A stretch of 64,000 bases of DNA. Origin: Octopus sinensis (taxonomy: Eukaryota). The DNA lies in the NCBI RefSeq assembly GCF_006345805.1, contig NC_043001.1:104346001-104410000 (forward strand), in the 5' to 3' direction. The translations under genes and the position numbers were made by a program. This document shows, in pieces, positions 12,856 to 63,524 of this stretch. Positions within the stretch are counted from its first letter, which is position 1, and the number at the start of each line of letters is the position of its first letter. A model generated the notes under the pieces. It was not told the origin of the DNA. It saw only the letters and a program-made list of their open reading frames with translations, and made no database searches.

Positions 12856-15504
12856 TGATATTTAATTTTCTGAAATAAATAAAAGAATTATAAAAATATA
12901 ATAAAACAAATTCATTAAGAAAATACTTTTTAACAAGTTATAAAATATTCTTCAACTATCTGTTTAGTATAAAATATTCCAAATCCTTTCTCTTTAACAA
13001 GATGGAAAGGCAAACCACAATAATCTCAACACCATACCTGTAAACTCCAGCCTCACAGGAATATTATCTGGTCAAAATATTAGTCAATGTTTGCTGCTCT
13101 TGAGTTGGCAAATATATAGAGAAGGGGTACACTAGGCTCATCCTATATCTCTGTATAGATTATCTAAGATTAGATGCTATAAATGGGGCCAATCTGAGAT
13201 TCTCTTCAGTATCGTAAAACAGTTAAAATGTTTAGCTAATAGCATAGTAGATAGGATTCTACTCTCTTCGGGTAAATGGTTCTGCTGGATACGTAGGAAA
13301 ACTGTAGGATATCAGTGGTTCTCAACTATTTTTTTGCCCTTGGATGCCTTTTGTTCCTATTTCACTCATTGGATCACCATAGCCATTCGATATATATATA
13401 TATAATATATATATAAATATCTCACTGTATATAAATATCTCATTTTAGTACCATTTGAGCATGATCGTTACCAGCATCGCCTTACTGGCACTTGTGCCGG
13501 TGGCACATGAACAAAACATTTGAATGAGGTCGTTGCCAGTGCCGCTGGACTGACTCCTGTGCAGGTGGCATGTAAAAAACACCATTTCGAGCGTGGCTGT
13601 TGCCAGTACTGCCAGACTGGCCCTCGTGCCGGTGGCATGTAAATTCACCCACTACACTCTTGGAGTGGTTGGTGTTAGGAAGGGCATTTGTAGAAACTCT
13701 GCCAGATTAGATTGGAGCCTGGCGCAGCCATCTGGTTTGCCAGTCCTCAGTCAAATCGTCCAACCCATGCTAGCATGGAAAGCGGACGTTAAATGATGAT
13801 GATGATGATGATGAATGTGAGACTGGTAAAATATAAAAAGATGATAATACAAGGTAGCTTACAAGTTAAACAGATGATTTAGAAGATTATAGAGTAGAGA
13901 TAATACAAAAGCTGGATAATTATTTTTCATGTAAGAAAGGAAAATCTCGATGTATTTATCAAACTCTAAATAGAAAAAATAATAATTTCTTACATCATCA
14001 CAAAATCATGGAACTGGAAAGAAGAGTGCAATCAATTTAATAGATCCTAATATTTCTTAAGTGCTTATCATATGACATCTGGAGGTATGAAAAGCAAAAT
14101 TAACTCTGATAAGATATGAACTCAGATCTTAGAGATCTGAGTTCATATATGAGATAACTAAATAAATCTTACCTTATCTGACCATAGGAGCCTCACCCAA
14201 ACATAGAAAATGTTTTATGCACAATGATTATAAACATTTTAGGGGTGTGCTTATATAATAAACAAGGGTGGGGCAAATACAAATACAACATCAAAACAGA
14301 CTCACTCAAAGATTCAACCACATTGTATTCTGAGGATTTACATGCCTCCAAATGTAATCTTCAGAAAGATTCAAACACTATTTCTTTCATAAACACTTTC
14401 ATCAAATTGACTAACAGTAAGGGATTGGGTATGGCTGTGTGGTAAGAGGCTTGCTTCTTCCCAACCACATGGTTCCAAGTTCAGTCCTACTGCATGGTAC
14501 CTTGGGTAAGTATCTTCTATTAAAGCCCTGGATCAACCAAAGCCTTGTGAGTAGATTTGGTAGATGGAAACTGAAAGAAGCTTGTCATGTATATGTGTGT
14601 ATGTGTGTGTGTATTTGTGTGTGTATATACATGTGTGTGTATGCACATCTCTGTGTATGGTTGCGCCTCACCACAGCTTGATAACTGGTGTTGGTGTGTT
14701 TACATTCCCATAATTTAGCAGTTTGGCAAAAGAGACTGATAGAATAAGGCTTAAGAAAAAACTAAGTACTGGGGCTTAATTCATTTGATTAAAAATTCTT
14801 CAAATGGGTGCCCCAGCATGGCCGCAGTCTAATGACTGAAACAAGTAAAACTTAAAAGATAAAAGATATCATGAAGTGCAAGGAAGACTGTGTGGTAAGA
14901 AATTAGTTTCTAACTACATGGTTTCAGGGTACCTTGGGCAGGTGTCTTCTTTTGTAGCCGCAGACCCAACCAAAACCTTGTCAGTCGATTGGGAAGATGG
15001 ATACTGAAAAAAGCCCACTGTGTATATACATGTGTGTGTGTATATATACAGGTGTGGTGTGTGTGTGTGTGTGCTACCATCTCTTTAACTTGACTTCATG
15101 TAATAGTTTGTAAACGAGTGTCACTGTTACGCAAGTGGTGTCCTTTGTTTGCTATCTGCCATGGAAACATGTCTGGTTATGGAGAAATATTATCTTGAAT
15201 GGAAACGAGTGAGGACTGGCAATCGAAAGGGCATCAGGCTGTGAAAAATATGCCTCAACAACTTCTGTCCAATCCATGACAACATGGAAAAATAGATGTT
15301 AGAATGAAGCTGATGTTGATGATGATGATGATTATGACAACGATGATAATCCCTATATCATTATCCAATTTATACATCAGTCTTCTCATTACTTAAAAGC
15401 AAAAAGTAAATTTAAACAATATGTGATAATATTACTTACTCAAATTTTTGTCTTTCAATGATGCTGGGGAGCTTTTCTATGTCCCTCACAAATTGTTTGT
15501 ATTC
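12856..15504 (-). CDS. Cassette U7: X 15504-15440 (EYKQFVRDIEKLPSIIERQKFE) + shortened Z-like exon starting at 12869 (KLNI...)
   Basis: catttctag|GAATAC..TTTGA|gtaagt (65 nt). At 12869 a strong acceptor tttatttcag|AAAATTA is followed 14 nt later by gtcagttgattc, resembling the Z donor gttagttgatac. The Z assignment is tentative. Confidence 0.55.
14428..14865 (+). mobile_element. tRNA-derived CORE-type SINE (octopus OR2-like)
   Basis: gtatggctgtgtggtaag head, accttgggtaagtatctt core, internal (GT)n, ccccagcatggccgcagtctaatgactgaaacaagtaaaa tail. Family name from memory. Confidence 0.75.
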
Positions 15505-15847
15505 CTAGAAATGTTTACAAAGAAGGCATTTATTGTGACTTTATAACAAAAGCAATAGATTTCACACCTATAATTCCATTTTAATTTGTACATTGACTGT
15601 TCAATGAAACTGGACATTTGTTATTTTTATCTTTTAATCTAAGACTCATGAAAGGGGGAGAGGAAAATATTCTCAAATGCAAGTCTTATCTCAGGTATAG
15701 CTGTGTGATAAGAAACTTGCTTCCCAACCACATGGTTCTGGGTTCAATTCCTCTGTGTGGTATCTTCGGCAAGTGTCTTCTATTAAAGCCTTGGGCCAAC
15801 CAGAGCAGTGTAATCGAATTTGGTAGAGAGAAACTGAAAGAAGCCTG

Positions 15848-15887
15848 ACATCTATCTATCTATCTATCTATCTATCTACCTATCCAC

Positions 15888-17793: not shown

Positions 17794-17841
17794 CTCGTTG
17801 TATTCAAAATAACTTTGTGCTAGTTTTCTGCAAAAGAAGAA

Positions 17842-24600: not shown

Positions 24601-25392
24601 ATCTCATTTAGACTCTCTTCCGAGTTAGTTTAGCTATGATATTCTCTGTAACTTTCATTGCCTGGTCTAACAATTTGATACTTCTGAAATTATTTCTGTC
24701 TAAGGCATCATCTTTACCATTGTAGCAGTTGATTGTCATGCTGTTACAGCAGCTATTGAGTATGACTCCCCCATGGACAATCTGATTAACTAGACAGGTG
24801 ACTAGACCATATCCCACTCTGCCAGATATATTAAGCATCTCAGCAGTGATACCTGATGAGCCAGGGGCTTTCCTTGTCTTCATATCCTTCATAGCTTTAT
24901 CTACCAAGCTACTATCTATTTGGACAGCTGCTCTCATTTTTATCAATTTTCATAGTGACATTTCCAAGCCTTCAAATTCATAAAACCCAGCTTTCAAATT
25001 AAAATTGGTGGAGTTCCTCCAACATATCATGTAAATTTGAATTTCAGTATAGTTTAAAACATTATTCAATTTTAACATTTTAAATTTCAAATGAAAAGAA
25101 ACTGTGAAGTAAAATTGAGCTGGGACTGAAAATTTCTTCCTTTATCTCTGCACGCACTTGGGCCTTATATCTTTTATCTTCTAGTTAAATATAAATATAA
25201 AAAAGGTGTAGTAAAAGCTAGATGAACAGGATTCTGCATATCTGCTTATGTCATCATATTCATGGGTTGTAGTCTTACATTGAATTACAAATAAAATTCA
25301 AATTAAAGATGTCATAAAATTACTTACATGACCTCTTTACTTCGAATAATTTCTGGATAGTCTTCAATTTTGCTCTTCAAGAAGTAATATTC
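17794..25392 (-). CDS. Cassette U6: X 25392-25328 + Z 17827-17794; EYYFLKSKIEDYPEIIRSKEVI|KLAQSYFEYNE (no T exon found)
   Basis: catttctag|GAATAT..GTCAT|gtaagt (65 nt); ttcttttgcag|AAAACT..AACGAG|gttagt (34 nt). Confidence 0.65.
17880..18070 (-). mobile_element. Second tRNA-derived SINE family (OK/OR1-like); other copies at ~29000, 29860, 33640, 39640, 49120, 53750-54210, 56200
   Basis: Reverse strand: cttagtggtatttcgcc..ttcaaatcctgccaaag..ctttcatcctttc..aataaaataagtaccagttg. Confidence 0.7.
18082..18305. repeat. (AAT)n-rich microsatellite; source of the poly-N/poly-I/poly-Y ORFs
   Basis: Seen directly in the sequence. Confidence 0.95.
18320..18640 (+). mobile_element. 3' fragments of an R4/Dong-like non-LTR element
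   Basis: VQKIVLTAMSHILRRALSL* remnant and a repeated gacactcggcaagaaatggaa end followed by (AAT)n. Confidence 0.45.
18640..20530 (-). mobile_element. Tx1/L1-clade LINE ORF2 C-terminal remnant with AATAAA and (TTA)n tail
   Basis: Frameshifted GLEPMDNFQKSLA.QCY..AL.V.DKLYRHGSAV..TC.RC...D..ILHALVQCP zinc-knuckle region. Confidence 0.75.
21930..22520 (-). mobile_element. Degraded RTE-type LINE fragment (different family)
   Basis: LLYCSETWMLTKKL...LQLSGHC motif (ORF 22077..22337). Confidence 0.7.
23180..24960 (-). mobile_element. Degraded RTE LINE with a small internal insertion at ~24340-24410
   Basis: KAMKDMKTRKAPGSSGITAEML, VGVHQGS, WELFFADDLVL, LSLRVNGRLYDACV. Confidence 0.9.
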
Positions 25393-26649: not shown

Positions 26650-27302
26650 AAAATTTCCTCAAAAATAAAAAAAAGAATGTTGGATGTATTGAATTTTGTA
26701 GTATCTAGATTAGTGGTTTTGGTGAAAATAAGAATATAGAATGGTTATAACTTCAACAATACTGAGCTTAAGGTCAATATTAGAACTGACCTGGAACTAA
26801 ACAATAAACAAAACCAGAAAATTGAATACAAACCCAATACAAGAAACAAAGACTTTCTCTTCCATTAGTTTCAATATCAAAGCTGTAGTGGGTTCTTTTA
26901 CCTCCACAAATTCAACAACTTTTTGTTGTGTTATTAGAGTTGAATAAATGGGATGCTACACTGAACTCACTTGCATTTCAATTCAGAAATTGTAAACATT
27001 AAACTAGTATATCAAAATCTTGTATACCATCAAGTCTGTTCCTCTTAATGCCGCACCAAATTACCAATATTCGAAAGACATGTAGAATTCCAAAACAAAG
27101 AAGCAAAGCAAAATATGTTTCGAGAAGAAAATTGTCATCAGCTATCATCTTTGAAATGGTACCAGGTTGTATTAAGTTCCTCAATTTCAGACAATGATCC
27201 AAAAGAAAGATAATACTTTCATGATTTTTTTATAAGTTTGTCAGATGAGGCAAGTTAGTTTCAATAACATTTTGGTAGCTCTGCCTCAGATTTCTAAGAA
27301 TT

Positions 27303-30300
27303 TTAGTGTATGATGTTCAACCTGAGTATCTGAAGGTAAAAAATAATTGGTGGAGAGTAACTGCTGATTTGGTCCAAATGAATGAAAGTGAGGAATTTCT
27401 CAATAAGGTCACCCAAGAACCAATCTTTTAAATATTTTGGTAGAAAACAAGAGAAATCACAGTCATGACATCTCTAGTTAGAAACACATCAGAAAGAACA
27501 TGTGACTTAGATGAAACTGCACCTTGTTACATACTGTGATGTCACAGGTAGGCTAATGATAACATTTACCTTATTTCTTAAATGAATTATAAGTCTTTAG
27601 AAAAACCTTCATAGATGACAGAATGTTGAAGGTTTTTGCAGCTTTATTTTTAACCCTTTAGCAGATTATTCAGTCAAAAGCAATGCTTAATTATCCCCGT
27701 TGTTTTGAATTAACCATGCATTATCTCATATATTTGAGACTTTCAATGGTATGACAGTACATTTTAAAAATGACATTGTAGGTTAGGTGTAAAAGGTAAG
27801 AGGTCATTGGTTTTGAACATAAGACAGGTAGGATATTTGGGTTTGATATTATAGCCAGTTTAAATGCTAAAGGGTTAAACATGTATTTGTATGAATTTTT
27901 ATGAACATTAAGGAATTAAAAGCATTAAATTTTATTACAAATGTGAGCACACACACAGTGAGGTAAGAAGTTAGTTTCCAAACCACATGCGTCTGGGCTC
28001 AGACCCAATGTGTGATGCATTCTACTATAGCCTGGGACCAACCAAAGCCTTGTTAGTCGAGTTGGCATGTGTAAACTGAAAGAAGCCCATCATATACACA
28101 TGTGTATGTGTGTGAGTTTATGTCTGTGCTTGGAAACCAGTGTTGTTGTGTTTACATCCTTGTAACTTAGCAGTTTGGCAAAACAGACCAATACAATGAG
28201 TAACAAAAAAATTACTCATTTTTTATGAATTCATTCAACTAAAAATTCTCCAGGGCAGTGTCCAGCCATTGCCACAATCTAATGAGTGAAAGAGAAGGGC
28301 GCATTGAAGGGCTCTGCCTGCATAAATGGAACAAAGGAGAGATAAAAACCTCTGGGGTTAAGATGCTTGTCTGTTTCAGTTCACATTACTACAGTATCTA
28401 TAACATTATTTCTACAGCAACACAAACAGAAGCAAATTATAGAGAAATGCTTTGCCTCACCTAAGAAAGACAAATACAGACTAAATACCTGGCTGGATTT
28501 GATCCCTTGACCCAATAATTTACTCCAATAACTATAGCATTTCTACAGGTCTATCTATCTCAGCAGTTTATAATTAAATAACACCAGATTTATTAACAAC
28601 TCAGTTACTTTCATCTCTGTAATTGTTTAGCCCCAGGCCATACCTGATCCAGGGGACCTGGGTGTGAAAGTGGATGGCTGTATTTTAAATGGGTATGGGA
28701 ATGGTTGGGTAGGGAAGATGTTCAATTTGCAACCACATGATTCCTGATTCAATCCCAATTCCCAGCACCTTGGACAAGTGTTTTCTACCATAGTAATTGT
28801 TTGACAAATTCCTTGTGAATAAAATATGGTAGATGGAAACTGTGTAGAAGACCAGCTGTTGCTTGTACATTGAAGCCTCTGTCTACAGCACAATGTTATC
28901 TAAGGAAAAGACAAAGGCCAATACAGTTCCACAGTAGTGTCACCACAAGCATGGCTGTGAGAAGGGAAAGAGCAGAATGAGATACCAAAAGGCATCCAAT
29001 CAGGACTGCTACTATTATTATCAAATTCCAAAAGTGAAAGGTAAAATTCACTGGTATTTGAACTCAGAATATAGGCAACCAAGACAAATACTGCAAAGCC
29101 TTCTACCCGATGCTGTGATCACTCTGCCAATATACTGCACAGTAAATAAATCGTAACAACTAACCTCAGGGCCTTTGAAGTATTCTTCTGCAAATTTCCT
29201 ACAAAAGAAAGAAACAAATTTTCATCACAACATCGCAATTTTCATCATTATTTCTACATCAACTCACAAAAAGAACCATTACAGAACTGTTCTAAATATA
29301 CAATACATTTGAATAGGTTTAATCTCTAATTATCACCAGGCATCATATTTGTGGATATCTGTAGAGTATGAAACTGGAATGTATTTAGTGTACTAAGATT
29401 TCTCAGTCAGCAAAAGCAGCCATGGTGAGTCGATGTCAGTTTTAGGTTTATCTTAACTGGCTTCTTAACAAGAGCATGACTCTTGCTAATAGGTAAAGCA
29501 TCTTGGTTTTCCAAAAGGAACAAATGAATAAATAATATCACAAAGTATTATAAATGCTTCAAATTTTCATTAAGCTTGAAACTCGTGTTCATTCATTCAA
29601 ATTAAGCTTCATTCAATTATTCTGGCAAAAGACTTTTGTCTTTGAATAACAAGTAATTCTTCATTATCTCCATTCTGTACTGCTCACTGGCCAATCTTTG
29701 GTCAGTTTTGGTAGCATATCAGGCATTTTAAGAAGGGGTTGCAAACCCTTTGATTTAACCCTTCCCCAATTATAGAGACAGAGACACTGTGGATGTGCCC
29801 TAAGGTATTTTACACAGCACAATGACACTAATGCAAAGAAAGTTAGAGTGTTAAGAATTTATCCCTGAATTTGATTGGTAATCTATTTATCAGACCCAGG
29901 AGGATAGAAGGTAATGTTGACTTCTGTGGGATTTGAACTCATAGCAAAGTGTGCTGGAAAGAGAAGTACAACATATTCAATCTGACACTCTCATGATCCT
30001 GTCAATTTCCACCAAACAAATACTTAGTAACTTTTTAATAGTCCACTAAGCAAACATAGCTATGTATGCTCAGAGGAATATTAAAACGGAGATCATTAGT
30101 TATTACAGGTTATTATTTTTATCATTATTCCTTAACTTTGTCCCACCTTGCTCCTCCTTGCCTGGCTGACTGACGTAGCCAACTACCTCCTCTATAGTAA
30201 GACAACTATCTCTGTCTCTCTGTCATACACTAAATTCTTGCCAGGCTCACAGCCATATCTCTCAAATCCACTCCGTCTCTCATCTAAGAGCCCATTGGCA

Positions 30301-31553
30301 ACTAACTCCACTTGTGCTGGTTCCACGTGATGGCACATGTGACACTGCCTTGTAGGAAGTTCCTATGCTACTGCCACATAAAATACGCTAAGTACACGCT
30401 CTAAAGTAGTTGGTGTTAGGAAGGGCTCCCAGCAGCAGAGACCATGCCAAAACATACACATGGAGCCTATTGTGTCCCTCCAGCTTGCCAGTTCCTATCA
30501 AACTATCCAATCCATACCATTAAATGATGATGGTTATACATGATGTTGATGATGGTGGTGGTGTTAAAGGTCTTTACTTGTAGGTAAAAAAATATTTTAC
30601 TTTTTATAATTGAATCAGGGCAAAATGAAGACAGACCAGGTTGAGATGACAATCATTTTAACTGAGAGATCTTGCAGATTTAAACAGGACTATTATATGT
30701 AATATAATCTTTACATGACTTTGTAGCGCAGAAGATTTCAAAGACATAATTTCTTATACATTATTTGTTATTTGTATTAAAATTTCAGATTTGTTTTCAA
30801 TTTCAGTTTCATAAAAATGAGACACTTTCATCAAAAAGCAATCAAGATTGGCAGATTATTTTATCCAAAGTTTGATGTCATCATCTTCAACATCGTAATC
30901 ATCATTTAATATCTGTTTTCCATGCCAGCATAGATTGGATTGTTTTCCAAGAACTGGCAAGGTGGGGAGCTGCAACAAGCTCCGGTCCTCTGCTTTGGTG
31001 AGGTTGTTATGGCTGAATGGACTTCCAACCACTTTCCAGAGTGCATTGGGTGCTTTTGAAGTGGCATCAGCAGAGATACATCTTACATGGCCCCAGGAAA
31101 GGGGAATCTTAATTTTAATCAGAGTTTAAAACGTTTTATTGTTCAATTCATTTCAATGTGAACTGGGGAAAGAAATGATCTTGAACTGAAAATTTCCCAC
31201 TTATTCTATTTCTCCCCTGTCTCTGTTCTGTGTGTGTATGAAATAGGTTTGAGCCTTTTGTCTTGCAGTTAAATACATAGAAACAAAAATGTTGCGCAAC
31301 CAGGACTTACTGAAGTTGAAATACTGAACAGAGATATTTCATGTTGTCTCATATCAACGATGTCATGGCTTCTCTTATTAATTTCTACATTTATAGTTCC
31401 TTATATCATTATCATATTTATACATCACAATCTCCTCATAATTCAAAGTCAAAATCAAACTTAAGCAGAATATTATACACTCCCTTACATTGCCTGTTCT
31501 CGTCCAAACTCTTCTGGATAACGGTTCACTTTGTTCACGAAATGTATATATCT
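27303..31553 (-). CDS. Cassette U5: X 31553-31489 + Z 29198-29165 + T 27329-27303; RYIHFVNKVNRYPEEFGREQAM|KFAEEYFKGPE|ILRLNIIH*
   Basis: catttccag|AGATAT..GCAAT|gtaagg (65 nt); ttcttttgtag|GAAATT..CCTGAG|gttagt (34 nt); ttttaccttcag|ATACTC..CACTAA. Confidence 0.7.
27654..27874. mobile_element. Short piggyBac-type MITE
   Basis: TTAA-CCCTTTAGCA ... TGCTAAAGGG-TTAA. Confidence 0.8.
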
Positions 31554-46408: not shown

Positions 46409-47751
46409 CTATAAATATTCAAAATGAAACCATATGTTTAGACTTTCATAATAAACTGAATGATTTAACATCTGCAGTTCTATTTTACCATGTAATTGAC
46501 TCTTCAATCAAACTGGATATTGCCTCACTTCCTGAAGCAATTGGTTGTTTTGCTTCTCTACATCCACAGCAACATCAAATTTCTGATATTTCAGGAACAT
46601 TGGAATAATTCCAAAACAAATTATTTCAACCAACTTTGTACGGTAGGAAAATTAAAGTAATCATTTCTAAACAATGCACAAGATCACACATTTTGTAGGG
46701 GTCTAAGTATTTGCAACACAGAGCTTGACTAATAAAGGAATGTGGTCTACTAATTAGGGTTTTAACTTCACAATTATAAAGTAATGGCTTTGCTTCCTGG
46801 ACCAAGAGGTACATTATGCCCCTGAGTAAAACGGTTCAGTAAATTTCCCTCTAATCTACTTAGCTGACAATATGCAACAGCTGAGTGATGCTGGAGCCCT
46901 CTCTCAATCCAGCTATCATGTCCTCACTGTTGGGTGAAAGGTAGGATGGTTGAGGAGTTGTTTGTATTGAATTGTCACTGCATAGACACATAAAACACTT
47001 AGTGAAAGTATGGTTTCATGTTACCAGATTATATTATTTTGTGTGAAATAGCTATGGGGTTATTTTTGTGGATTATTTTTCTAAATACTTGACTAATATT
47101 TTCTGAAATCAGAAAGGATGAAAGACAAAATTGACAAATGTGAGATTCAAAATCAGGCAATAATCCCCCACTTCATTACAAGAAGTTGCAAAATATTCAT
47201 TGCATTTTGAATAAAAAAAAAGTTTTGGATATACTGGATCTTACAGTATCCAGATATAGTTTTTGGGTAAGGAAAGAAGACAAAATGGTATCACTTTGAA
47301 CAACATTGCTCATTCAGAACCTAGCTGGAATTAAGCCTTTCAGAGTGAATGCACCCATATCCAGCCTCAATATTCTGTTTAATATTTACACCAACCACAT
47401 CTAACTTCCCATATCATCAAGTCTTAAAGCTGTACCAAATTACTAATATTGAAAAGAGATGTAGAATTCCAAAACAAAGAAGCAAAATATGTTTCAGGAA
47501 GAAAATAAATCTAATCTCTAGTTCCTAACAGAAAAGGGCCATCACAGAAGGCAACATATAATCATTTCATTTGCTAAAATATAGCAGCCAAATTGTTATC
47601 GACTATCATCTTTGAAATAGCATCAGCTTGTATTAAGTTCCTCAATTTCAGACAATGCTCCAAAATAAATTCAATATTTTTTTATAAGTTTGTCAGATGA
47701 GGCAAGTTACTTTTTGTGACATTTTGGTAGCCCTTCAGACTTGTAAAGATT

Positions 47752-50700
47752 TCAATGTATGATGTTCAACCTGATTATCTGAAGGTAAAAAATGAAACCC
47801 AAACTGTTGGTAATCTTTATCACCACATGATTGAAAATGAGGAATTGTACATTAAATGTTTCTGCCATTGATGTTGCTGCTAATACTACTATTAATACTG
47901 CTGCTGCTGTCGCCTCTGCCATCGACAACCAAAACCATTACTACCATACCACTATATTCACCCGAGGACTATTGCTTTGTCAACTGACATTGCTGCAAGT
48001 GTTACCTGTAGTTAGGTTGCAGCCCAATTTTAGACAATATGAAGAGATTACCTGCTAAATTAATCCCAACACAGACATGAATTGATATAGAGGAAGGCCA
48101 AACGCTGAATAAATAAAAAAAAAAAACACCTGCACTGGATTTGATCCTATGATGTAAGAGCATGTAATCCAATATTTTACTCTTGCAACCATAGCATTTC
48201 TGCGAGTGTATATACATTGGCAGTTTATGATTAAATAATACCAGATTTATTAACAAATCAGTTATTTTTAGCTCTGTTGTAATTGTTTAGCCCCAGGACA
48301 GTCCTCTTCCAGCAGACCTATTATCCAAAAGAGTGCTTCTAATGACAAAACCCAATAAGGACACTTATGCAGGGCCTCCATCACTGGTAGGAAAAGGGAA
48401 GGATGAAACCATCACTTGCTTGTTATCATCAGATCATATACCTCAAGTGAATGCTTACTACAGAAGGAATTCCACTGAATGCATCATTGGTACAGCTGGT
48501 GGTATAAGAATGGACAAGGGATCAAACCTAACACCAAAGAACTTGTAAAGCCCATGCAAGAGAGCTTTCAAAGAGTTTGCTGCTATCAAACTTCAAACAC
48601 CAAATTAGATTTGACCCCAGGTTAACATAGAAATAATTATCTTAGGAATTCTGTATTGAGATAGAACCTGGAAGCACATGATTGCAAAGTATACTTTTTA
48701 AATGCATATCAATGCTTGTGTCTGCTTTGTGGCTGTGAAAGTGGATGGCTGTATTTTAAATGGGTGTGGGCATGGTTGGGTAGAGAAGACATTCAATTTG
48801 AAACACATGATTCCTGATTCAATCCCAATGCACAGCACTTTCGACAAGTGTTTTCTACTCCAGTAATTGTTTGACCAATTCCTTGAGAATAAAATTTGGT
48901 AGATGGAAACTGTGTAGAAGACCAGCTGTTGCTTGTACATTGAAGCCTCTGTCTACAGCACAATGTTATCTAAGGAAAAGACAAAGGCCAATACAGCTTC
49001 ACAGCAGTGTCATCACAAGCATGGCTGTGAGAAGGGAAAGAGCAGGATGAGATACCACAAGGCATCCAGTCAGGTGTTTTAACAATCCTGGACTGCTACT
49101 ATTATTATTAAATTCAAAAAGTGAAAGGTAAAATTAACTTCACTGTTATTTGAACTCAGAATTTAGACAACCAAGACAAATACTGCAAAGCCTTCTATCC
49201 GATGCTTGAATCTCTCTGCCAATATACTGCACAGTAAATAAATCGTATCAACTAACCTCATACTCTTTAAAGTGTTGCTCTACCAGCTCCCTGCAAAAGA
49301 AACAAACAAATTTTCATCACATCATCACAATCATCATTATTATTTCTACACCAGCTCACAAAAAGAACCATTACAGAATTGTTATTTTGTGTTTGTAAAT
49401 TTTATTATTTTAATCTAAATCTACAATACATTTGAATAAGTCTAATCTCTATCAGGCATCATATTTGTGGATGTCTGTAGCATATCAAACTGGAATGTAT
49501 TTGAATTATAAGTCTTCCTTCATCGATTATTAATCTTTAGAGAATGTTGAAGGTTTTTGCAGTTTTTCTTCTAAATATATTTGAACAAGTTTTTATGGAC
49601 ATTTATATGTGAATAGTATCAATTTTTCTATGGCTGAATGCCCTTCCTAACATCAATCACTCCAACAGTGTAGTGGGTGCTTTTGCATACCACTGGCATG
49701 GGTGCCATTGATATGACACCAGCATCAGCCATGTCTATGATCTCACTTGGCTTGACAGGTCTTCACAAGCACAGTATATCACCAAAGGTCTTGCTCACTT
49801 GTCACTGCCTCCATGAAGTCCAATGCTTGAACAGTGTCTTTAACATGCCACTGGTATGAGTGCCAGTTCGATGGCACTGGCATTGGTCACAACTATGATC
49901 TCATTAGGCTTGTCAGATCTACTCAAGCACAGCATATTGCCAAAGGTCTCGGTTACTTATCATTGCCTCCATGAGGCACAACTTTTAAAGATCATGCGTG
50001 ATCATCTCGGCCCATATCTTCCTGGGTCTGTTTCTTCCACAGGTTTCCTCCACCATTAGAGGACAGCACTTCTGTCCTTGTCCATGAGCATCGTATCACC
50101 ATACCAATGCAGTCAACTCTCTTACACACCATATCTGATACCTCTTATACCTAAATTTTCTCTCAGGGTGATTACACTGTTGTGCATGCACACTGATATT
50201 ACACATCTAGTGGGGCCTACGAGATTCATTTCTTACAAACCTATGCATGTCCTTGGCAGTCACTGTTTCACTGCCATGTAGCATGGCACTTTGCACCTAG
50301 GCACCATACAATCTTCCACAGCAGAGGTAGGAGCTCTTTGAACTTTGCTCAGCCTATTCTTCTAGCAGCTATGCTCTTGGGGCATCTGACTTGGCCACCT
50401 ACCTTCCACACACAAAAGCTATTTTTCCTGTTAACCTTCCTCTGATATTGCTGCATATCTTATGTGTCTATAGCTTACACTGGGTACATATTATGAAGTT
50501 TCTACCTACACCATTTCTACGGATCAAGCAGGGCCATCTACCTAAAGGTGTGTGTGATTTGTCTGCCTTCCTACTTACTAAGACTTTGGCTTTTGGTAGG
50601 TTAACTCTAAGGCCCTTCGATTCCATTGCTGCACATCTTATGTGTCTATAGCTTACACTGGGTACATCTTATGGAGTTTCTACCTACACCTGTTCTACAG

Positions 50701-51684
50701 ATCAAGCAGGGCCATCTACCTAAAGGGATGTGTAATTTGTCTGTCTTCTTACTTACTAAGGCTTTGGTTTTTGGTAGGTTAACTCTAAGGCCCTTCGATT
50801 CTAGAACTTGCTTCCACACCTGAAACTTCTCTAGTTCTGGAAGTGATTCAGCTTTAAGAAGAAGGTCATCAGCATAGAGGAGCCCCCAGGGACAGCCTCT
50901 CTTGAATTTCTCAGTTATTGCCTGGAGGACTATGATGAACAAGAGGGGACTGTGGCGTCATCCTTGGTGAACCCCTACGCCTACCTGGAGTTCTTTGCTA
51001 TACTTGATGCCAACCCTCAACTTACTGACCACATCCCTGTACTTGGCTTGTACAGCTATCACCAACCACTAGTCGATCCCTAGTTTCTGAATAGACCATC
51101 AGATAAGGTATTGAAGAACCATGTCAAAGGCTTTTTCCAAGTCAACAAAAGTCAAGTACAAAGGTTTATCTTTGGCTAGGTATTTCTCATGCAGCTGTTT
51201 TACCAGAAATATAGCCTCAGTGATGTTTCTTCCAGCACAAAACCAAATTGCATTTCATCCAGACTAACTCTCTCGCTAATTAGTTGGGCTATGATCCAAG
51301 AATCTTAAACCTCTGTAATTATTTCTAAAGTATCACCTTTACCTTTGTAGCAGTTGACTATGGTGCTGCTACACCAGTCACTGGGTATGACTCTTTTGTG
51401 TACCACCTGGTTAAAACATACAAACAAAATTAGTATATTCAAAGTTGCATAACCAGGACTTACTGAAGTTGAAACATATATATTTAATGTTGTCTCATAT
51501 CAACAATGTCATGGCTTCTCTTACTATCCTGACATCATCATCATATTTATATACATCATAGTTTCTCTATAATTGAAGGTAAAAATTAAATTTAAGCAGA
51601 ATCTTATAAAATTACTTACAGGGCTCTTTTCCTTTTTATAGAGTATGGATGGCTGTCCATTTCCTTTTTGAAATTTTCATATGA
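47752..51684 (-). CDS. Cassette U3: X 51684-51620 + Z 49290-49257 + T 47778-47752; SYENFKKEMDSHPYSIKRKRAL|ELVEQHFKEYE|IIRLNIIH*
   Basis: cttttttag|TCATAT..GCCCT|gtaagt (65 nt); ttcttttgcag|GGAGCT..TATGAG|gttagt (34 nt); ttttaccttcag|ATAATC..CATTGA. Confidence 0.7.
49630..51400 (-). mobile_element. Degraded RTE LINE with an internal ~180-bp tandem duplication (50450-50810)
   Basis: PWGLLYADD and GRWPCLIC motifs; the cttacactgggtacat block is repeated. Confidence 0.88.
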
Positions 51685-52226: not shown

Positions 52227-52689
52227 TCTTTGTTTGTCCTGAACCATTGCATGACAACCAGTGTTGGTGTGTTTATGCTCCCATAATCTAGCAGTCCACC
52301 AAAAGTGATCAACAGAATAAGTACCAATCTTAAAAACAACAGGTACAGGGGTTGAGTCATTCCACTAAAAATTCTGAAAGGTGGTACCCCAGCATGGCCA
52401 CAGTCTAGCAACTGAAACAAGATGAAAGATATATTGGATAATGCTGTATCAAGATTCACAGTGAGTTCATTAGCTTCTATTTCAAAGGAGGAATGGGTAC
52501 TTCTCCAACCAGCTACAAACACTACTGCTGCCTATCAGCTAAATTGTTGTATGTTGTGTTATCAGACAGGAAAAGATGGAAAGCTATGTTGACCTCCGCA
52601 CAATTTTGAATACAGAAATTCAAGAAAAGTGTTAAGCTGTCATTTGATTGCTCAGCTAAATCTTTATCAACTATCATCTTTAAAATGTC

Positions 52690-55600
52690 TTAAACACGTT
52701 TGTTAGAAGGGGCAGGTAAGTTTCCATGATATTTTGGTAGCCCTGTCTCAGACTTGTAAGGATTTCCATGTATGTTGTTCAACCTCAACATCTGAAGGAA
52801 AAAACAAATGGATGGAGAGGGAACTGCTGATTTCGTCCAAATGCATGAAGGTGAGAGAATTCATACTAAAAGCACCCAAGAAGCAGATGGTGGTGTTAAA
52901 GTGAGTGGTATGTAAGACCTGTATCCAGTTTTCTGATAAAACAAAGGACTTTGATCAAAACAAAACAGCTGGTCATCTTATGTCCATATGAAGGAAAATA
53001 ACGACCTATAGATTGGAAATCATCATCATCATCATAGTTTTAATATACACATTTCATAGCTTACATGGATCTGGCAAAATTCATTCATATAGTATTTTTA
53101 CAGTGTAAGGATTTAATGTGTGTCCTTGGTCTTTAGACTCTCATGGAAAGACAACTGGAGCTAAACAACAATAACTGTAATAGCCACAAAAGTCACAATC
53201 AATGCTGTTGCTGCTACTGGTGGTTGTGCTGCTGCTGCTACCCCTACTACTTTAAAAAAGGAATACCACCAGCATTTCACCTTCAAAAGCAAAATAATGC
53301 TAAATCTGAAAACAACTTTTAAGGTCTCTGGTTTGTGATATAACAGATGAGAGATAACAAGTCTGTGGTTAGGATGCTTGTCTCTTTCAATTCAACATTA
53401 ACAGAGGATCTTCTAACTTATTTCCAAGACCTACACAAACTCAATATGCTGCCTCGTACAAAATAAATAAGAACTAACCTTGTTACTTCCAAAATGTTTT
53501 TTCGCTAATTTCCTGTGAAAGAAATAAAGGAACACACATTATCATGACTATTGTGATCATCATCACAATCTTTACATCTTCAGACAAAGACAAAAAACCT
53601 ACGATTATAACATTTTGTGCAATTAATTCTATCTTTAGACATGAATTCTTTGAACCTAGATTTGAACTTCATTTCAATTACTTTAATCTCAGAACCTCAT
53701 TAGGAGTTTTATTCTTGGCTATTAATATTTATCTCTCAGCAAAGACTGAAATACTGGTTTCAAAGGCCTGCAATTTCGGGGGAGGGGTAAGTCAATTACA
53801 TCAACATGTAACCACAGGCAAGTGTCTTCTGCTATAGCTTTGGGAAACTGAAAGAAGCCTGCCACACACACGTGTGTGTATGTGTGTGTGTGTGCATCTT
53901 TGTTTGTCCTGAACCATTGCATGACAACCAGTGTTGGTGTGTTTATGCTCCCATAATCTAGCAGTCCACCAAAAATGATCAACAGAATAAGTACCAATCT
54001 TAAAAACAATAGGTACAGGGGTTGAGTCATTCCATTAAAAATTCTGAAAGGTGGTACCCCAGCATGATCAACTGGTACTTATTTTATCGACCTTGAATGG
54101 ATGAAAGGCAGTTAACCTTGGCAGAATTTCTACTCAGGAAGTGAAGATGGACAAAATACCACTAAGCACTTTGCCTGGCATAGTAACAATTCTGCCAGCT
54201 CACCACCATAGCAAACACAGAAATATTGAACTGATGTCACTACTGGCCTTACTAATTGCATTATTGGTAAGACGTATATGTCCTGATTCTTTGATTCTCA
54301 TGAGTTTTCCACTTTGGAATTACAGAATCTTCATTCTATAGCATTATATTAATTCATTTCTCACTCCATATGTATTAAAATGTTTATTCTGTCATTAAGG
54401 CTTTTCTTCCATCCCAACCTTTAGAACCTCGCAGTGTTTCATATACAAGGCCCTCCATAAATGCATGGCATGTTATAAATGCAGTTTTAATGTTCCAAAT
54501 GAAACAATGCAGATGGAGATGCATAAAAAACCATTTTCATCTCAAAAGATGAAGTTAATAATCTGAAAAATATATAATCACATCTGCAATAAATCATCTC
54601 AAACATTTACATATTTAAGAAACATTATTCTCAAATTCAAAATACAGCCTTTCTCATTTACAAAACAAACAGCCAAAGAAACAAAGAAATACAGAAAACA
54701 TGTTACTGTGGACCTGTTTAGTTCTGTAGAGTGTTAGAGTAATGAAGAATGAGGGCAGACTGGAGTTTATATTCTAGTGGTCCTTGTGGTGTAAATGGAC
54801 ACCATACAGATTAATGAACCAAAGCTACATAGAAATCATAAAAGAGGATCACACCCTCAACAGGTCTGAGGTGTAGAATAACACTTGGGGCATTTGCTTG
54901 CTCATTTTCATATGCATAACAATTTGTCTCCTCATAAAATATTATCAATTAAGCACCAAAGATAACCTTTGCAGCATGTAGAGTCCACTGACTTTGGTTG
55001 TTGTTGTACATCATAACAACGTATTCCCAAAGATGATCATGTCTCTGAAGACTGGTCCTTAGGATTCACTTTAACCATGAACAATTCAAAATGATGTGAA
55101 TAAAGAAGCTTTACATTTGCCAGAGTAATCTCATTGCTAAACAGTTAATCATTGTATATTTTTGTAGTATTATCATATTTAATGATGCATATTTTTATGT
55201 CCTTTTAGACTGTATTATTTTCAAAATACAACTCATAAGAATTTAACGATATAATTTCTCATAAATTATTTTACACACATTTGTATTAAGCTTAATATCT
55301 TAAATTTCAAACTGAGAAAGCTAAGATATATCCAGGAAATACAGGAAAACATTGATTGAATCCATCAAACGATTGAGTTTGAATTTCAAATGTAGCTTAA
55401 AATAGTATTTGTTTGTTCTTCTGCTCTCAACACTTCTTGATGATAGCAATCTGTGAAAATATCTCAATTTTAAATTTTAAACTGAAAAAAGGGAGAAATA
55501 AATTCATTCATTCACCTAGCCGTCATATCCACCCACTATTTGCTGTCAGGTTAGAGTATCGCATCTATAGGGTCTAATCAGAAGTGACCATCACTAGACT

Positions 55601-58081
55601 GCCTGACTGGATTTCCAAGAATGACCAACTGAGACAATATTTTGCTCCACCAATTGGCTTGGCTTGAAGAGTCCATCTAGTGATTCTTTCATGCAACATT
55701 CTAATCCGGTACCAGAGATGAAACTCTTCAATGGGCAGAAGTAGAAGTTTGCCCTGGAGAGACTCCCTAGCCTCCAAGCTATGCATCTTGTCAAGTAACA
55801 TTACTCTAGAGACCTTTTGGTACACTGTGGCATGAAAAGTTGCAGCAGAGGCAGTAAAAAAACTCCAAGACTAAGTCATATAAGAACTCTGGGTTTAAGC
55901 TGGACTCTGATATTAGGTTGATCAATAAAGTACAAGGTGGTATCAAAAAGTTTCCAGACTAGTTCTGTAGCATGCCAACAGATAGTAGTAGAAAGCTGCA
56001 CGTGCAGTGAGAGCTAGCAGTGACCTTTATGAGTTAGTGTGCAGATTGACATCTCGATGTTTACTTTGTAAATTGTGGAATTTGTGTTTTTGTGATCATA
56101 TGTATATTGTATATTTTTGTCAATGGATAGGAAGTTGGAACAAAGAGCCAATGTTTAGAGACAAAGAGCCAATGTTTAGATACCTATATCTTTACATTGG
56201 TTTTAAATTTTGGCACAAGACCAAGAGAGCTAAGTCAATTACAATAACCCCAGTGGTCAAATGCTATTTATTCTCTCAACCCCAAAAGGTGAAAAGCAGA
56301 GAATTTGAACCCAGAATGTAAAGAAGCACGACATGCCACTAAGCATTATGCTAAAGACTCTGCCAGCTTGCCACCTTATATATGTATCTCTATATTGTTA
56401 TATTTATGCATCACTATTAGACTGGATGAAAAATGCAACTTTTGAAATTGGTAACCAAGAATCGATATTTTGTTGCGAATTTGTGTTTAAAGAAAGGTGT
56501 ATGAAAATGCTTGTGATTAAATATTTTTTTCAGGCTTTGAAACGCAATTGAAAATTTTAAAAATCGCCATTTTTGGTTGAAGTTTGGATCTCATGGATTA
56601 TAAGTTGTAAGGAATACATATTTCTACATAGCAGAATGCAAAACAGTAAATATAGTATTTTTAAGAGGTTGCATACCAAGTTTCAATACAATTGACTAAT
56701 ATCTTGAGGTTTCACATTGACTGTAAAGAGAACAAGAGAGTGAATTTCTCTCCAGTGCCACTGCAACAGTTATTGTGTGTGGACATACGTCGTACATGTG
56801 TGAAGTTTTCTGCTTTGTACCTTGACTTTAGGCCATTGTATTAAAATTAATGATCATTTTAAATATAGTGTTGATTACATTTAGTGATGACTCATAAGCC
56901 AATAATACATCATGATACTGACTGCCCAATATTTGGTATTCTATGTGATTTAAAGAGCAAGTTTTGCCAACTTACAAGGATGAACTAAAATGTGCTTTAT
57001 TTGAATGAGAAAAAGAAAAGAACGTAGTTAACAGAGATCTTTCAATTAAATAAATTGTCAAAATTGTAGCAGAAAAGATAATTCTTCTTTAGCAAAAGGC
57101 ATCCAATATTTGTGTTATGACTGAGTCAGTTAAACTTGAAAATCTTGATCTTAAAGTACCATGCATTACTAAAATTTGTGAAAAATAGAAAAAATGTGCC
57201 ATCATTTCAAACAAAGTGTAATGTGTTTATAAACAATGCAACAAAAGATTTGACATTTCCTGTTTCAAGTGCAACGCCTTTAAAAACTGTAGTTGTAGTA
57301 GAGCCAAGTACAGGATCAATGAACAAATTGAAAAATGATCATTGGTGGAATAGATCAAGCAGTATCTAAACAGTACATGCAGAGCCTAATTAGAAAGAAT
57401 CAGCCAGATCACAGTCGCCTTTCTGTGTCAGCAAAGGAAAGTTTCAGATTTTCAGCTTAACTCGCTCAATCATAACACAAGGGATGGATGCATTTTGCCT
57501 AAGAAAAATTATCTTTTCTGCTACAATCTTGACAATTTATTTAATTTATTTTAATGAGTGTGTAATCTAGACCTCATGTAACAGATATATTTAGTGAACT
57601 AGTTTAAAAAATGATAAAGAAAACAAAGTCGAGAAGTCTATTTATTTCACACAATTTTGAAATTTCAAGTACATGGTGGAGCCTAAAGATATAAATATTA
57701 GAGCTTGAGATTTTAACACTCTGGTTTTTAAAGGATTTCGCAAAAGAAAATCGATTTGTAACAAGGAATTTAGAATGGCAAATGAGTTATAAATTGATAT
57801 TTTGTTCATTATTCAAAATTTCAAATGGGCTGCGGAGCCTCAAGATGTAAATTTAATAACTTCAACTTTTAACTTTTTAAAGGAGTTTGCAATAAAAGAT
57901 ATATTCTTGAAAAGATATTTTGAAAATCTGTGTAAAAAGTACCTTTTTGCTCCACTCTAATTGCTATGTCTTTATTTCAATAAAGTAAAAATTGAACAAA
58001 ATGTAATAAAAATATTTACTTAGCTCTTTCTCTTTCAATATATGGAAAACGGCACAGTTCAGTCCAAAAATTTCCTAAGCC
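52690..58081 (-). CDS. Cassette U2: X 58081-58020 + Z 53512-53479 + T 52791-52690; GLGNFWTELCRFPYIERERAK|KLAKKHFGSNK|MLRLNNIHGNPYKSETGLPKYHGNLPAPSNKRV*
   Basis: tatttgcag|GGCTTA..GCTAA|gtaaat (62 nt); ctttcacag|GAAATT..AACAAG|gttagt (34 nt); ttttccttcag|ATGTTG. Phases are compatible. Confidence 0.7.
55935..56130 (+). mobile_element. Left-end fragment of a second mariner family
   Basis: TIR caaggtggtatcaaaaagtttccagactagtt, matching the right TIR at 63210-63241. Confidence 0.7.
56900..57546. mobile_element. Unclassified DNA-transposon-like remnant with 61-bp inverted repeats (57044-57104 / 57486-57546)
   Basis: Inverted repeat seen directly; transposase-like residues VLPTYKDELKC and FDISCFKC. 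Confidence 0.4.
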
Positions 58082-58602: not shown

Positions 58603-58652
58603 TGTTGGGTGAAAGGTAGGATGGTTGAGGAGTTGTTTGTATTGAATTGTCA
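58603..58652 (-). CDS. Candidate 50-nt exon E (phase uncertain); near-identical copy at 46928-46977
   Basis: gtctatgcag acceptor and ACA|gtgagg donor. Phase-1 reading is (L)TIQYKQLLNHPTFHPT; phase-2 reading is DNSIQTTPQPSYLSPN. Confidence 0.3.
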
Positions 58653-61355: not shown

Positions 61356-61565
61356 GAGTAAACCAGGAAACCCTCATCTGAAGCATTGTCAATTTTTGTA
61401 ATCAATTGCTCTCGGTTGGAACTACTATTATCAAACAAGAAAGAATGAAAATTAAAGTCACTTTTAAATGTTTAGAACTAAAACAAATACAGCAAGGCAT
61501 TCTCTCTGATGCCCAAACTAATTGGTCAAAATAATATCATAGAAATAAATAGAGTATCAACTAAC

Positions 61566-63524
61566 CTGCATGCATTTAAAATTTTTTCCTGATACATTCC
61601 TGCAAAAGAAATAAACACACATCTTCATTTCACCATCATCACTATCATCAAAAAGAACGGCTATGGTTTCATATATGTATAAAAAAACATTATTTACATC
61701 AGACGGGTATTTGTTTTCATCTTGTTTGTTGTTAACACAATGTTTTGGTTGATATACCCTCAAGCCTTCATCAAGTGTCTTGCAGAAATATCAAACCTGG
61801 GTTCTCATTCCTAATGTATTTTTTGATGTTATTATTATTATTCAGGTCACTGCCTGGGATTGAACTTGGAATCTTGGGGTTAGTAGCCCGCGCTCTTAAC
61901 CACTACACCATATGCCAGTGGGCATATCCGTCATATGTAAATAATGTACATAATTTCTCTTTTCTTAATAAAACTGTATAAAAAAAGTTTCCATGTGTCT
62001 TAAACAAGCCATGTTGATGGTACTTGCAAACCTGCAGACACTATAGAGAACTAGTAATGCTCCTTGGTAAAAATGCTATGTCAAAGATTACTGGTACTTT
62101 TCAAATATCACTGGGCTAAAAGTTCTCAAGAACAGAGCACTTAATTTGTTGCCATTGGTATCCAGAGATTCCTTGAAGAATGTCATCAATTTACCCTGCT
62201 ACTAGTTCGTTAGTTCTCTATAAATTACCAATGTAAAAATTCCACCAGTTGCATTATTCAACAGGTGGGTAGCTGTGAGCATTTGACAACATTCCTGATG
62301 CCAGGCACTAACTACTGGATGCAGTTTAAAATCATACGCAGAATTTTTAGTTAGATATGAGATTGTATCAAAATATTCATGGACTAGTTCTGCAGTATGC
62401 CAACAGATGGCAACACATGACTGCATGCACAGTGACAGCCAGCAATGACTTTTATGAGGCAGTGTGCCAAGTGACATTGCTGTGTTTTCCTCACAAGTTG
62501 TGAAAATTGTGTTTTTGTGATCATGCGTATGTTGTAGTCTGCAATTTTTGTCAGGGACAGGAAGTTGGCACAAAGAGCTAATGTGAAATTTTGTGTTGAA
62601 CTTGGGAAGTCTGCTACAGAGACTTACAGTGATGGCAAGCTTACAGTGATGGTGAAACAGGCCATGCGCAATGTTTCAAGTGGCACAAGCACTTCTGAAG
62701 GGATGACAGAGCTACATCTCAATCAAGAGCATGTTCATCATTTTGTTGATATATATGGTATTGTGCATTGAGAATTTGTCCACCAGGGCTGGACCATTGA
62801 GAGTTCTACTGCAACATTTTGAAGCATTTGAGGGAGAACACTTCACACAAGAAACTGGATCAGTAGAGCGTTAAGAATTGGATCCTTCACGACGACAATG
62901 CACCCTGTCACTGAGCTCTCCTCACTCGTGTGTGTCCCACCAAAAATTGCTTCTACACCTGCCCCATTGACCAGATTTAGCACCTATGGACTTTATCTCT
63001 TCCCCAAGATGAAAATGCAGGTCAAAGGTCACCGTTTTTGAGATCAAGAGCGAGTTGCAGAAGGTCCTCAAGTTGTTAATGGAAAACGACTTCCAGACTG
63101 GATTCCAAAAGTGGTAGGAATGCTGGGATCAGTGTACTGCAGTGCAAGTTGACTATTTTGAAGAAGGTGATGTTAAAACTTTGGTAAATAAGTTATATTT
63201 TATTAAACATAACTAGTCTGGGAACTCTTTGACACCACCTTGAAAATAGAAATATAATGGTGTAATAAGCTAAAGTAGGACTTACTGAAGTGGAAATACT
63301 GAATATACAATTCATTATCTCTTACATCAACCTTGCTAGGGATTCTCTTGCTATTTTCTGCTTATACATCCTTATATCATTATCATTTATACATCAATGT
63401 CTTCTCATTTAATTAAGAATAAAAATGAAATTTAAAAAAGAAGTTATGAAATTATTTACTTAGCTTCTCTTTTGAGAATACCGTTTGGAAGGTTACGTAT
63501 CTCCTCTGCAAAGTCTCTATATTC
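61566..63524 (-). CDS. Cassette U1 of tandem exon array: exon X 63524-63460 + exon Z 61599-61566; EYRDFAEEIRNLPNGILKREAK|NVSGKNFKCMQ (no T exon found)
   Basis: ttttctag|GAATAT...GCTAA|gtaaat (65 nt, phase 0>2); ttcttttgcag|GAATGT...ATGCAG|gttagt (34 nt, phase 2>0). Open frame across the junction, homologous to the other cassettes. Confidence 0.65.
61830..61920 (-). mobile_element. Short tRNA-derived SINE with (TAA)n tail
   Basis: Reverse strand: ggcatatggtgtagtggttaagagcgcgggctactaaccccaagattccaagttcaatccc...aataataataa. Confidence 0.7.
62358..63241 (+). mobile_element. Internally deleted mariner (second family)
   Basis: QRANVKFCVELGKSATET, WILHDDNAPCH and DLAPMDF..FPKMK remnants; TIRs at both ends. 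Confidence 0.85.

What the first reader, a model, noticed from the sequence alone, without database searches (positions are those of the whole stretch)
12856..63524. Hidden minus-strand array of seven paralogous mini-exon cassettes (X-Z-T)
Seen: seven exon X copies (15440, 25328, 31489, 46350, 51620, 58020, 63460; 59-65 nt, all phase 0>2), six intact 34-nt exon Z copies (17794, 29165, 33338, 49257, 53479, 61566; all phase 2>0, all with a gttagt donor) and four T exons (27303, 32638, 47752, 52690). All have canonical AG/GT sites, open frames, and indels only in multiples of 3. The order is always X then Z then T. The peptides share xYxxFxxx[ILMV]xxxPxxIxRxxA and xxxx[YH]F motifs. All exons are too short for the ORF track. 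Inference: an unannotated expanded gene family or a cassette system embedded in TE-rich DNA.
Basis: partly seen in the sequence, partly recalled or inferred. Interest (0 to 1): 0.88.

Follow-up and report, generated by a model that had tools for sequence, protein, structure and literature searches.

The report
Repeat exons of one annotated octopus gene
The small "X" and "Z" exons are real, but they are consecutive coding exons of one already annotated, uncharacterised Octopus sinensis gene (LOC115212235) that encodes a long chain of about 32-residue helical repeats; they are not a hidden family of mini-genes, and the "T" exons are not exons.

Summary
All 7 X exons (59-65 nt, phase 0>2) and 6 Z exons (34 nt, phase 2>0, GTTAGT donors) are on the minus strand at the stated coordinates. 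They alternate strictly (X-Z-X-Z...).

Spliced in genomic order they give one open frame. It is 100% identical to residues 1228-1444 of RefSeq XP_036358878.1, "uncharacterized protein LOC115212235 [Octopus sinensis]" (1935 aa, gene range about 310 kb). Four further exons of that gene lie at 12869-768. So the array is annotated, and it belongs to one gene rather than seven.

Each X+Z pair encodes one 31-33 aa helix-loop-helix repeat. The protein has about 33 such repeats in two alternating subtypes. They follow four UBA-like domains and precede an Ala/Glu/Lys-rich tail.

The same exon-pair layout, phases and donor types recur in O. bimaculoides and in Argonauta hians.

The T blocks are intronic. 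They carry 13-nt and about 25-nt indels and early stops, are absent from every gene model, and were not found in the Argonauta locus.

No Pfam, PDB or Foldseek match explains the repeat, and relatives were found only in octopods.

One unexplained feature remains. Between species the exons diverge about twice as fast as their introns, while paralogous introns evolve in concert.

The parts
63460..63524 (-). X exon (65 nt, phase 0>2), subtype A; codes XP_036358878.1 aa 1228-1249
61566..61599 (-). Z exon (34 nt, phase 2>0, GTTAGT donor); aa 1250-1260
58020..58081 (-). X exon (62 nt), subtype B; aa 1261-1281
53479..53512 (-). Z exon (34 nt); aa 1282-1292
51620..51684 (-). X exon (65 nt), subtype A; aa 1293-1314
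49257..49290 (-). Z exon (34 nt); aa 1315-1325
46350..46408 (-). X exon (59 nt), subtype B; aa 1326-1345
33338..33371 (-). Z exon (34 nt); aa 1346-1356. The 13-kb intron upstream of it holds LINE and mariner fragments
31489..31553 (-). X exon (65 nt), subtype A; aa 1357-1378
29165..29198 (-). Z exon (34 nt); aa 1379-1389
25328..25392 (-). X exon (65 nt); aa 1390-1411
17794..17827 (-). Z exon (34 nt); aa 1412-1422
15440..15504 (-). Last X exon (65 nt); aa 1423-1444
12764..12869 (-). Exon that leaves the repeat array (106 nt, phase 2>0). It starts Z-like ('KL...'); aa 1445-1479.
11254..11297 (-). Coding exon (44 nt); aa 1480-1494
4399..4444 (-). Coding exon (46 nt); aa 1495-1509
768..880 (-). 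Coding exon (113 nt); aa 1510-1547. The gene continues beyond the window start
52678..52910 (-). T block: a conserved intronic segment, not an exon
47653..47892 (-). T block: intronic, not an exon
32577..32797 (-). T block: intronic, not an exon
27205..27461 (-). T block: intronic, not an exon

Best explanation
The window is a 64-kb piece of the roughly 310-kb Octopus sinensis gene LOC115212235, transcribed from the minus strand.

**Shown**
- X and Z are the two halves of one protein repeat. X encodes helix 1, the loop and the start of helix 2 ('xYxxFxxx[ILMV]xxxPxxIxRxxA'). Z encodes the rest of helix 2 ('KLAxxYFxxxx').
- X is phase 0>2 and Z is phase 2>0, so every X+Z pair is a frame-neutral module of 31-33 codons. 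The pairs are spliced in series.
- The window holds the last 6.5 of about 33 repeats.
- Two repeat subtypes alternate, so the real period is about 65 aa, or four exons.

**Inferred: origin**
- The array grew by tandem duplication of exon pairs together with their introns.
- Gene conversion still homogenises the introns within each species, while the exons keep their separate identities and diverge fast.

**Inferred: function (weak)**
- The product has four N-terminal UBA-like domains, a long rod of helix-loop-helix repeats, a non-repeat region, and an Ala/Glu/Lys-rich tail of about 290 aa.
- It has no obvious N-terminal signal sequence by eye; no predictor was run.
- I take it to be a large intracellular scaffold or adaptor, possibly ubiquitin-related.

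**T blocks**
- They are intronic sequence inherited with the duplicated unit.
For: - **Identity to a RefSeq protein.** The spliced X-Z chain is open throughout. It is 100% identical to XP_036358878.1 over aa 1228-1444. With four more exons it reproduces at least aa 1228-1542. The gene range is 310 kb.
- **O. bimaculoides.** The orthologous locus L001 is colinear with the window at 85-92% nt identity. All 7 shared exons keep their frame and splice sites. RefSeq model LOC106881217 there joins X-Z-X-Z without T.
- **Argonauta hians.** The models show the same layout: X-type exons of about 62-71 nt with GTAAGT-like donors alternate with 34-nt exons that have GTTAGT or GTCAGT donors. The Octopus nucleotide profiles detect 13 X and 12 Z there.
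- **Repeat structure.** About 33 repeats were parsed, with alternating subtypes A and B.
- **Domains and fold.** UBA_4 (43 bits) and UBA_8 (38 bits) match the N-terminus. An AF2 model with an in-register alignment (pLDDT 73.7) shows helix, loop with a short beta-bridge, helix in each repeat.
- **Concerted evolution of introns.** Intron identity is 0.92-0.96 between paralogs within a species, against 0.90-0.92 between species. Paralogs share species-specific indels.
Against: - I could examine no RNA evidence. The RefSeq and Argonauta models are predictions, and exon skipping or occasional use of T cannot be excluded.
- Between species the exons evolve no slower than the introns: 84.4% against 91.6% identity, dN/dS about 0.55, differences spread 21/15/19 over the three codon positions. 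Purifying selection is therefore weak. By itself that pattern would also fit decaying pseudo-exons.
- The function is unsupported by any homolog of known function.
Confidence: 0.92

Rival explanations
1. One reading: seven separate paralogous units (X-Z-T), each the end of its own small gene or an independent cassette, with T as a terminal exon.
For: - T blocks have a conserved pyrimidine tract plus CAG, followed by a short phase-0 ORF with a stop.
- The units are clearly paralogous, introns included.
Against: - Neither the RefSeq models nor the Argonauta model contains T.
- T ORFs are 8-33 codons long, with 13-nt and about 25-nt indels even between orthologs.
- T is missing from 2 of the 6 Z-to-X introns and was not found in the Argonauta locus examined.
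- No unit has a start codon or upstream exons of its own, and X-Z-X-Z reads through as a single ORF.
Confidence: 0.03
2. An alternative-splicing cassette system. Each X+Z pair is frame-neutral, so pairs could be skipped or chosen combinatorially to give isoforms of variable length or composition. The conserved intron flanks and the T blocks would then act as splicing regulators.
For: - The phase symmetry 0>2>0 holds for every pair.
- Intron flanks are more conserved than the exons.
- T blocks carry a motif complementary to 5' splice sites (aaacttacctg / aaactaacttg).
Against: - The only available models include every exon in series.
- No competing docking or selector pairing was shown.
- Intron similarity is explained by concerted evolution, seen as species-specific indels shared between paralogs.
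- The T motif is not found in Argonauta.
Confidence: 0.12
3. Decaying or non-functional repeats: exons of a gene under no constraint that annotation pipelines chain together.
For: - Exon divergence is at least as high as intron divergence.
- dN/dS is about 0.55, with no third-position excess among the differences.
- Amino-acid identity between O. sinensis and O. bimaculoides is only 68-82% across the protein.
Against: - All 13 window exons are open, as is each of the roughly 33 repeats.
- Splice sites, phases and the core residues (Y2, F5, A21, L24, F29) persist as far as Argonauta.
- Length changes in X are all multiples of 3.
Confidence: 0.05

Closest known systems
RefSeq gene LOC115212235 (XP_036358878.1), Octopus sinensis, 'uncharacterized protein'
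   Same: Identical. All 13 X/Z exons and the four downstream exons reproduce at least aa 1228-1542 exactly.
   Different: Nothing differs. The model has no described function, no literature and no T exons.
O. bimaculoides LOC106877687 / LOC106881215 / LOC106881217 and Argonauta hians GAB1598822/3
   Same: - They are orthologous or homologous repeat arrays with the same exon-pair architecture.
   Different: - The O. bimaculoides gene is split into at least three partial models by runs of N in the held sequence.
- Amino-acid identity is 68-82% to O. bimaculoides and about 25-30% to Argonauta.
Genes whose internal protein repeats are built from tandemly duplicated exon sets (for example nebulin super-repeats or apolipoprotein(a) kringles; from general knowledge)
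   Same: - Frame-neutral exon modules duplicated in tandem together with their introns.
- A higher-order super-repeat.
- Homogenisation between the units.
   Different: - Here each 32-aa repeat is split over two mini-exons of 59-65 nt and 34 nt.
- The introns, not the exons, are what stays homogeneous.
Gene families with exons more divergent than introns (snake-venom PLA2, conotoxins, primate NPIP/morpheus; from general knowledge)
   Same: Exons are more divergent than the flanking introns, both between paralogs (50-55% against 64-72% identity) and between orthologs (84% against 92%).
   Different: - Those are separate secreted or duplicated genes; this is an internal repeat of one apparently intracellular protein.
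- dS is also raised here (0.28), so positive selection is not demonstrated.
UBA-like domains (Pfam UBA_4, UBA_8) and EF-hand pairs
   Same: - The protein's N-terminus does contain UBA-like domains.
- The repeat is a short helix-loop-helix with a beta-bridge in the loop.
- The weak Foldseek hits are mostly EF-hand proteins.
   Different: - The repeats match neither family significantly: hhalign against the protein's own UBA-like domains gives E=0.21.
- There are no Pfam EF-hand, TPR or UBA hits within the repeats.
- The best Foldseek hit has E=0.33 and TM about 0.2.

Membership tests
Coding exons of RefSeq LOC115212235 (O. sinensis) | The spliced exons translate exactly to the deposited protein | tested here: met
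   100% identity over at least aa 1228-1542, with AG/GT boundaries at every exon.
Internal tandem repeat of one gene (as opposed to a multigene family) | The units are joined in one continuous ORF, with no start or stop per unit | tested here: met
   - X-Z-X-Z reads open through all 13 exons.
- The protein has about 33 contiguous repeats.
Internal tandem repeat of one gene | Transcript evidence for the serial junctions | not testable with these tools
   - No RNA-seq or Iso-Seq access.
- Support comes only from three independent gene models.
   - 13-nt and about 25-nt indels, and stops at variable positions.
- Absent from all models.
- Not found in the Argonauta locus.
Mutually exclusive or combinatorial exon cluster (Dscam-like) | Only one, or a subset, of the paralogous exons is included per transcript | not testable with these tools
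   The models include all of them in series. Isoform data are needed.
UBA-like domain (PF14555 / PF22566) | A significant profile match of the repeat unit | tested here: not met
   - The Pfam hits lie only in aa 1-381.
- hhalign of repeats against the N-terminal UBA-like domains gives E=0.21.
EF-hand | A 12-residue DxDxDG...E loop, or a Pfam or structural match | tested here: not met
   - No Pfam hit.
- Foldseek E is 0.3 or worse.
- By eye, the loop is about 3 residues shorter than the canonical one.
TPR or other curated helical repeats | A Pfam or PDB sequence match | tested here: not met
   Nothing found at E<=10 apart from noise.

The most novel reading that the evidence does not exclude
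LOC115212235 is an orphan gene restricted to octopods. Under this reading its mini-exon pairs are kept diverse, by diversifying selection or by conversion templated on paralogs, while gene conversion keeps their introns nearly identical. The frame-neutral pairs may also be used combinatorially in splicing. That would make it an intracellular variable-repeat recognition or adaptor array of a fold not yet described.
Probability: 0.15. Interest if true: 0.55.

Novelty: already known. Interest (0 to 1): 0.22.

Why it matters
As a discovery claim it does not stand: the exons are already in RefSeq.

What remains of interest is modest:
- **Annotation.** This is one large, fast-evolving, uncharacterised gene seen so far only in octopods. 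In O. bimaculoides it is split into at least three partial models, so that annotation could be merged.
- **Repeat family.** The 65-aa double repeat has no Pfam family.
- **Evolution.** Homogenised introns around rapidly diverging mini-exons make a neat case for studying gene conversion against selection in exon-duplicated repeat genes.

Tried and rejected
- **Plus-strand reading of T.** T reads as an exon on the plus strand (tag|...CTGAAG|gtaaaa) in only 2 of 4 copies with an intact GT, and one copy has a stop. Rejected.
- **T or conserved introns as a known ncRNA.** Rfam at gathering thresholds finds nothing in the window.
- **SEP domain in aa about 1555-1610.** This was a resemblance recalled from memory. 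There is no Pfam or PDB sequence support. Dropped.
- **Repeats derived from the N-terminal UBA-like domains.** hhalign gives E=0.21. Not supported.
- **Single-sequence AF2 of P0001.** pLDDT 46, uninformative.
- **First pseudo-alignment from overlapping slices.** It misaligned by register and was replaced by A2.
- **Foldseek against PDB.** No significant hit.
- **Literature.** Searches for the locus and protein identifiers returned no papers.
- **Wider homology searches.** Nothing found outside Octopus and Argonauta: full-sensitivity phmmer on 1.84 billion representatives, and word-indexed searches with the chain, with the N- and C-terminal parts, and with a repeat profile.
Full report
**Observation.**
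- Reading the minus strand at the stated coordinates shows all seven X copies and all six Z copies, each with a pyrimidine tract plus AG and a GT donor.
- The exact bounds give X lengths of 65/62/65/59/65/65/65 nt (phase 0>2). Z is always 34 nt (phase 2>0), and every Z has a GTTAGT donor.
- Nucleotide profiles built from exon plus 60-nt flanks find exactly these 13 copies in the window and no others.
- In transcription order they alternate strictly: X63460, Z61566, X58020, Z53479, X51620, Z49257, X46350, Z33338, X31489, Z29165, X25328, Z17794, X15440.
- The window is AT-rich (about 31-46% GC in 2-kb bins) and full of transposon debris.

**What it is.**
- Joined in that order, the 13 exons give one uninterrupted reading frame of repeats of about 32 aa.
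- A word-indexed search with that chain found O. bimaculoides LOC106881217. It is a 207-aa model made of X-Z-X-Z repeats with no T.
- A full-sensitivity phmmer search of 1.84 billion representative proteins with that protein returned four proteins. The best was a 1935-aa protein, XP_036358878.1, 'uncharacterized protein LOC115212235 [Octopus sinensis]'.
- My spliced chain is 100% identical to its residues 1228-1444.
- Four more exons (12869-12764, 11297-11254, 4444-4399, 880-768) continue the match to at least residue 1542, all with AG/GT boundaries.
- The gene spans about 310 kb in GCA_006345805.1.
- The window is therefore O. sinensis (or a near-identical genome). The exons are annotated, and they belong to one gene.

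**Related species.**
- The O. bimaculoides locus (L001) is colinear with window 64000>46250 at 85-92% nt identity. All seven shared exons keep their frame, AG and GT.
- X and Z copies continue upstream of the annotated gene start there.
- Runs of N in the held L001 sequence explain why the O. bimaculoides gene is split into partial models: LOC106877687 (N-terminus, 79% identity), LOC106881215 and LOC106881217.
- In Argonauta hians the homologous models have the same architecture. X-type exons of about 62-71 nt with GTAAGT-like donors alternate with 34-nt exons that have GTTAGT or GTCAGT donors.
- The Octopus nucleotide profiles recover 13 X and 12 Z copies in the Argonauta locus.

**T.**
- The four T blocks are related segments of about 230 nt, lying in 4 of the 6 Z-to-X introns.
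- In phase 0 they stop after 8, 12, 8 and 33 codons.
- Nine copies (four from the window, five from L001) differ by 13-nt and about 25-nt indels within the proposed ORF, including between orthologs. Similarity runs well beyond the proposed exon edges.
- Orthologous T identity (0.87-0.96) is like the intron average of 0.916.
- T is in no gene model and is undetectable in the Argonauta locus.
- The conserved pyrimidine tract plus CAG is unexplained. So is a motif complementary to 5' splice sites (aaacttacctg / aaactaacttg).

**Protein.**
- XP_036358878.1 has UBA-like domains in its first 381 residues: UBA_4 at 43 bits and UBA_8 at 38 bits, both above the curated cut-offs.
- About 33 contiguous repeats run from aa 378 to 1446. 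A non-repeat stretch follows, then an Ala/Glu/Lys-rich tail.
- Two repeat subtypes alternate strictly, so the true period is about 65 aa, or four exons:
  - A, 33 aa: eYkxFxkevnxypexfgxxxAkkLAekyFKgxe
  - B, 31-32 aa: gYxxllxeLxxxxxIDKErAkxLAxkyFGxxk
- AF2 with an in-register alignment of repeat triplets gives pLDDT 73.7, and 85-94 over residues 80-140. Each repeat is predicted as helix, loop with a short beta-bridge, helix.
- No significant match explains the repeat: Pfam, PDB sequence search, Foldseek against PDB, and hhalign against the protein's own UBA-like domains.
- The function is inferred only from the architecture: an intracellular scaffold or adaptor, possibly ubiquitin-linked.

**Evolution.**
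- Between paralogs, the exons are 50-55% identical while their 60-nt flanks are 64-72% identical.
- For the subtype-B X exons, the 400-nt upstream intron is 92-96% identical among paralogs within a species, against 90-92% between species. Paralogs share species-specific indels, so the introns evolve in concert.
- The exons behave differently: they pair by orthology (85-89%) and are only 46-71% identical between paralogs.
- Between species, the exons are 84.4% identical (298/353) and the introns 91.6% (13128/14328); Fisher p = 1.2e-5.
- dN = 0.15, dS = 0.28, dN/dS = 0.55. Differences fall 21/15/19 over the three codon positions. The transition fractions are similar, 0.65 in exons and 0.62 in introns.
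- Amino-acid identity between O. sinensis and O. bimaculoides is 82% in the N-terminus and 68-76% in the repeats.
- Possible causes are diversifying selection, or conversion from divergent paralogous exons. Conversion would change exons much more than the already similar introns. The present data do not separate these.

**Verdict.**
- X and Z are confirmed and T is rejected.
- The 'hidden, unannotated family or cassette system' reading is replaced by the terminal part of the internal repeat array of an annotated, uncharacterised gene.
- Relatives were found only in Octopus and Argonauta, and there is no literature on these loci.
- The finding is ordinary as a discovery. A modest evolutionary curiosity remains.

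Noticed in passing
window 27205-27461, 32577-32797, 47653-47892, 52678-52910 (minus strand); L001 1885-2122, 2524-2699, 7698-7848, 30404-30614, 35664-35892: The intronic T blocks keep a pyrimidine tract plus CAG. They also carry a motif, aaacttacctg / aaactaacttg, that is the reverse complement of a consensus 5' splice site (CAGGTAAGT / CAAGTTAGT). It resembles the 5' end of U1 snRNA and is complementary to the GTAAGT and GTTAGT donors of the X and Z exons. No function is known, and the motif is absent from the Argonauta locus.
   Followed up: partly
window 58082-58876 and 46409-47258; L001 9182-10075, 15223-15961, 24269-25181, 36780-37701: The introns upstream of subtype-B X exons are 92-96% identical among paralogs within a species and share species-specific indels, so they evolve in concert. 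The adjacent exon cores are under 60% identical.
   Followed up: yes
L001 (O. bimaculoides CM046605.1, 4695974-4743618): N runs at 5665-7698, 10140-11282, 27984-28953, 41292-43300 and 44766-47645 interrupt the array. What is one gene in O. sinensis appears there as at least three partial RefSeq loci: LOC106877687, LOC106881215 and LOC106881217.
   Followed up: partly
window 34400-46250: The 13-kb intron between X46350 and Z33338 is swollen by transposon fragments. These are a reverse-transcriptase ORF at 41399-41977 (+), several related LINE pieces (35883-36987, 41408-42756, 44598-45606), a Mos1/mariner HTH at 39976-40353 (+), and a PHD-like ORF at 45072-45464 (-). The region is also richer in GC (0.41-0.46).
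   Followed up: partly
window 3627-3801, 4750-5173, 9767-10039, 10080-10397, 13447-13814, 16283-16597, 25815-26100, 42933-43186, 45641-45834, 59126-59548: A SINE-like repeat of about 190-420 bp occurs in more than 10 copies in both orientations, at 75-91% identity. It gives spurious ORFs that begin '[24 protein letters not shown]'.
   Followed up: no
window 6053-6232 and 6303-6482; 20680-21460, 33892-34359, 54346-54911: There is a perfect 180-bp direct duplication 250 bp apart. A young repeat of about 470-570 bp is also present in three introns at 94-98% identity.
   Followed up: no
window 12764-12869, 11254-11297, 4399-4444, 768-880 (minus strand): The four non-repeat exons downstream of the array keep the same alternating phase pattern (2>0, 0>2, 2>0, 0>2). 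The first of them starts like a Z exon ('KL...'), which suggests it derives from a Z copy that lost its donor.
   Followed up: partly
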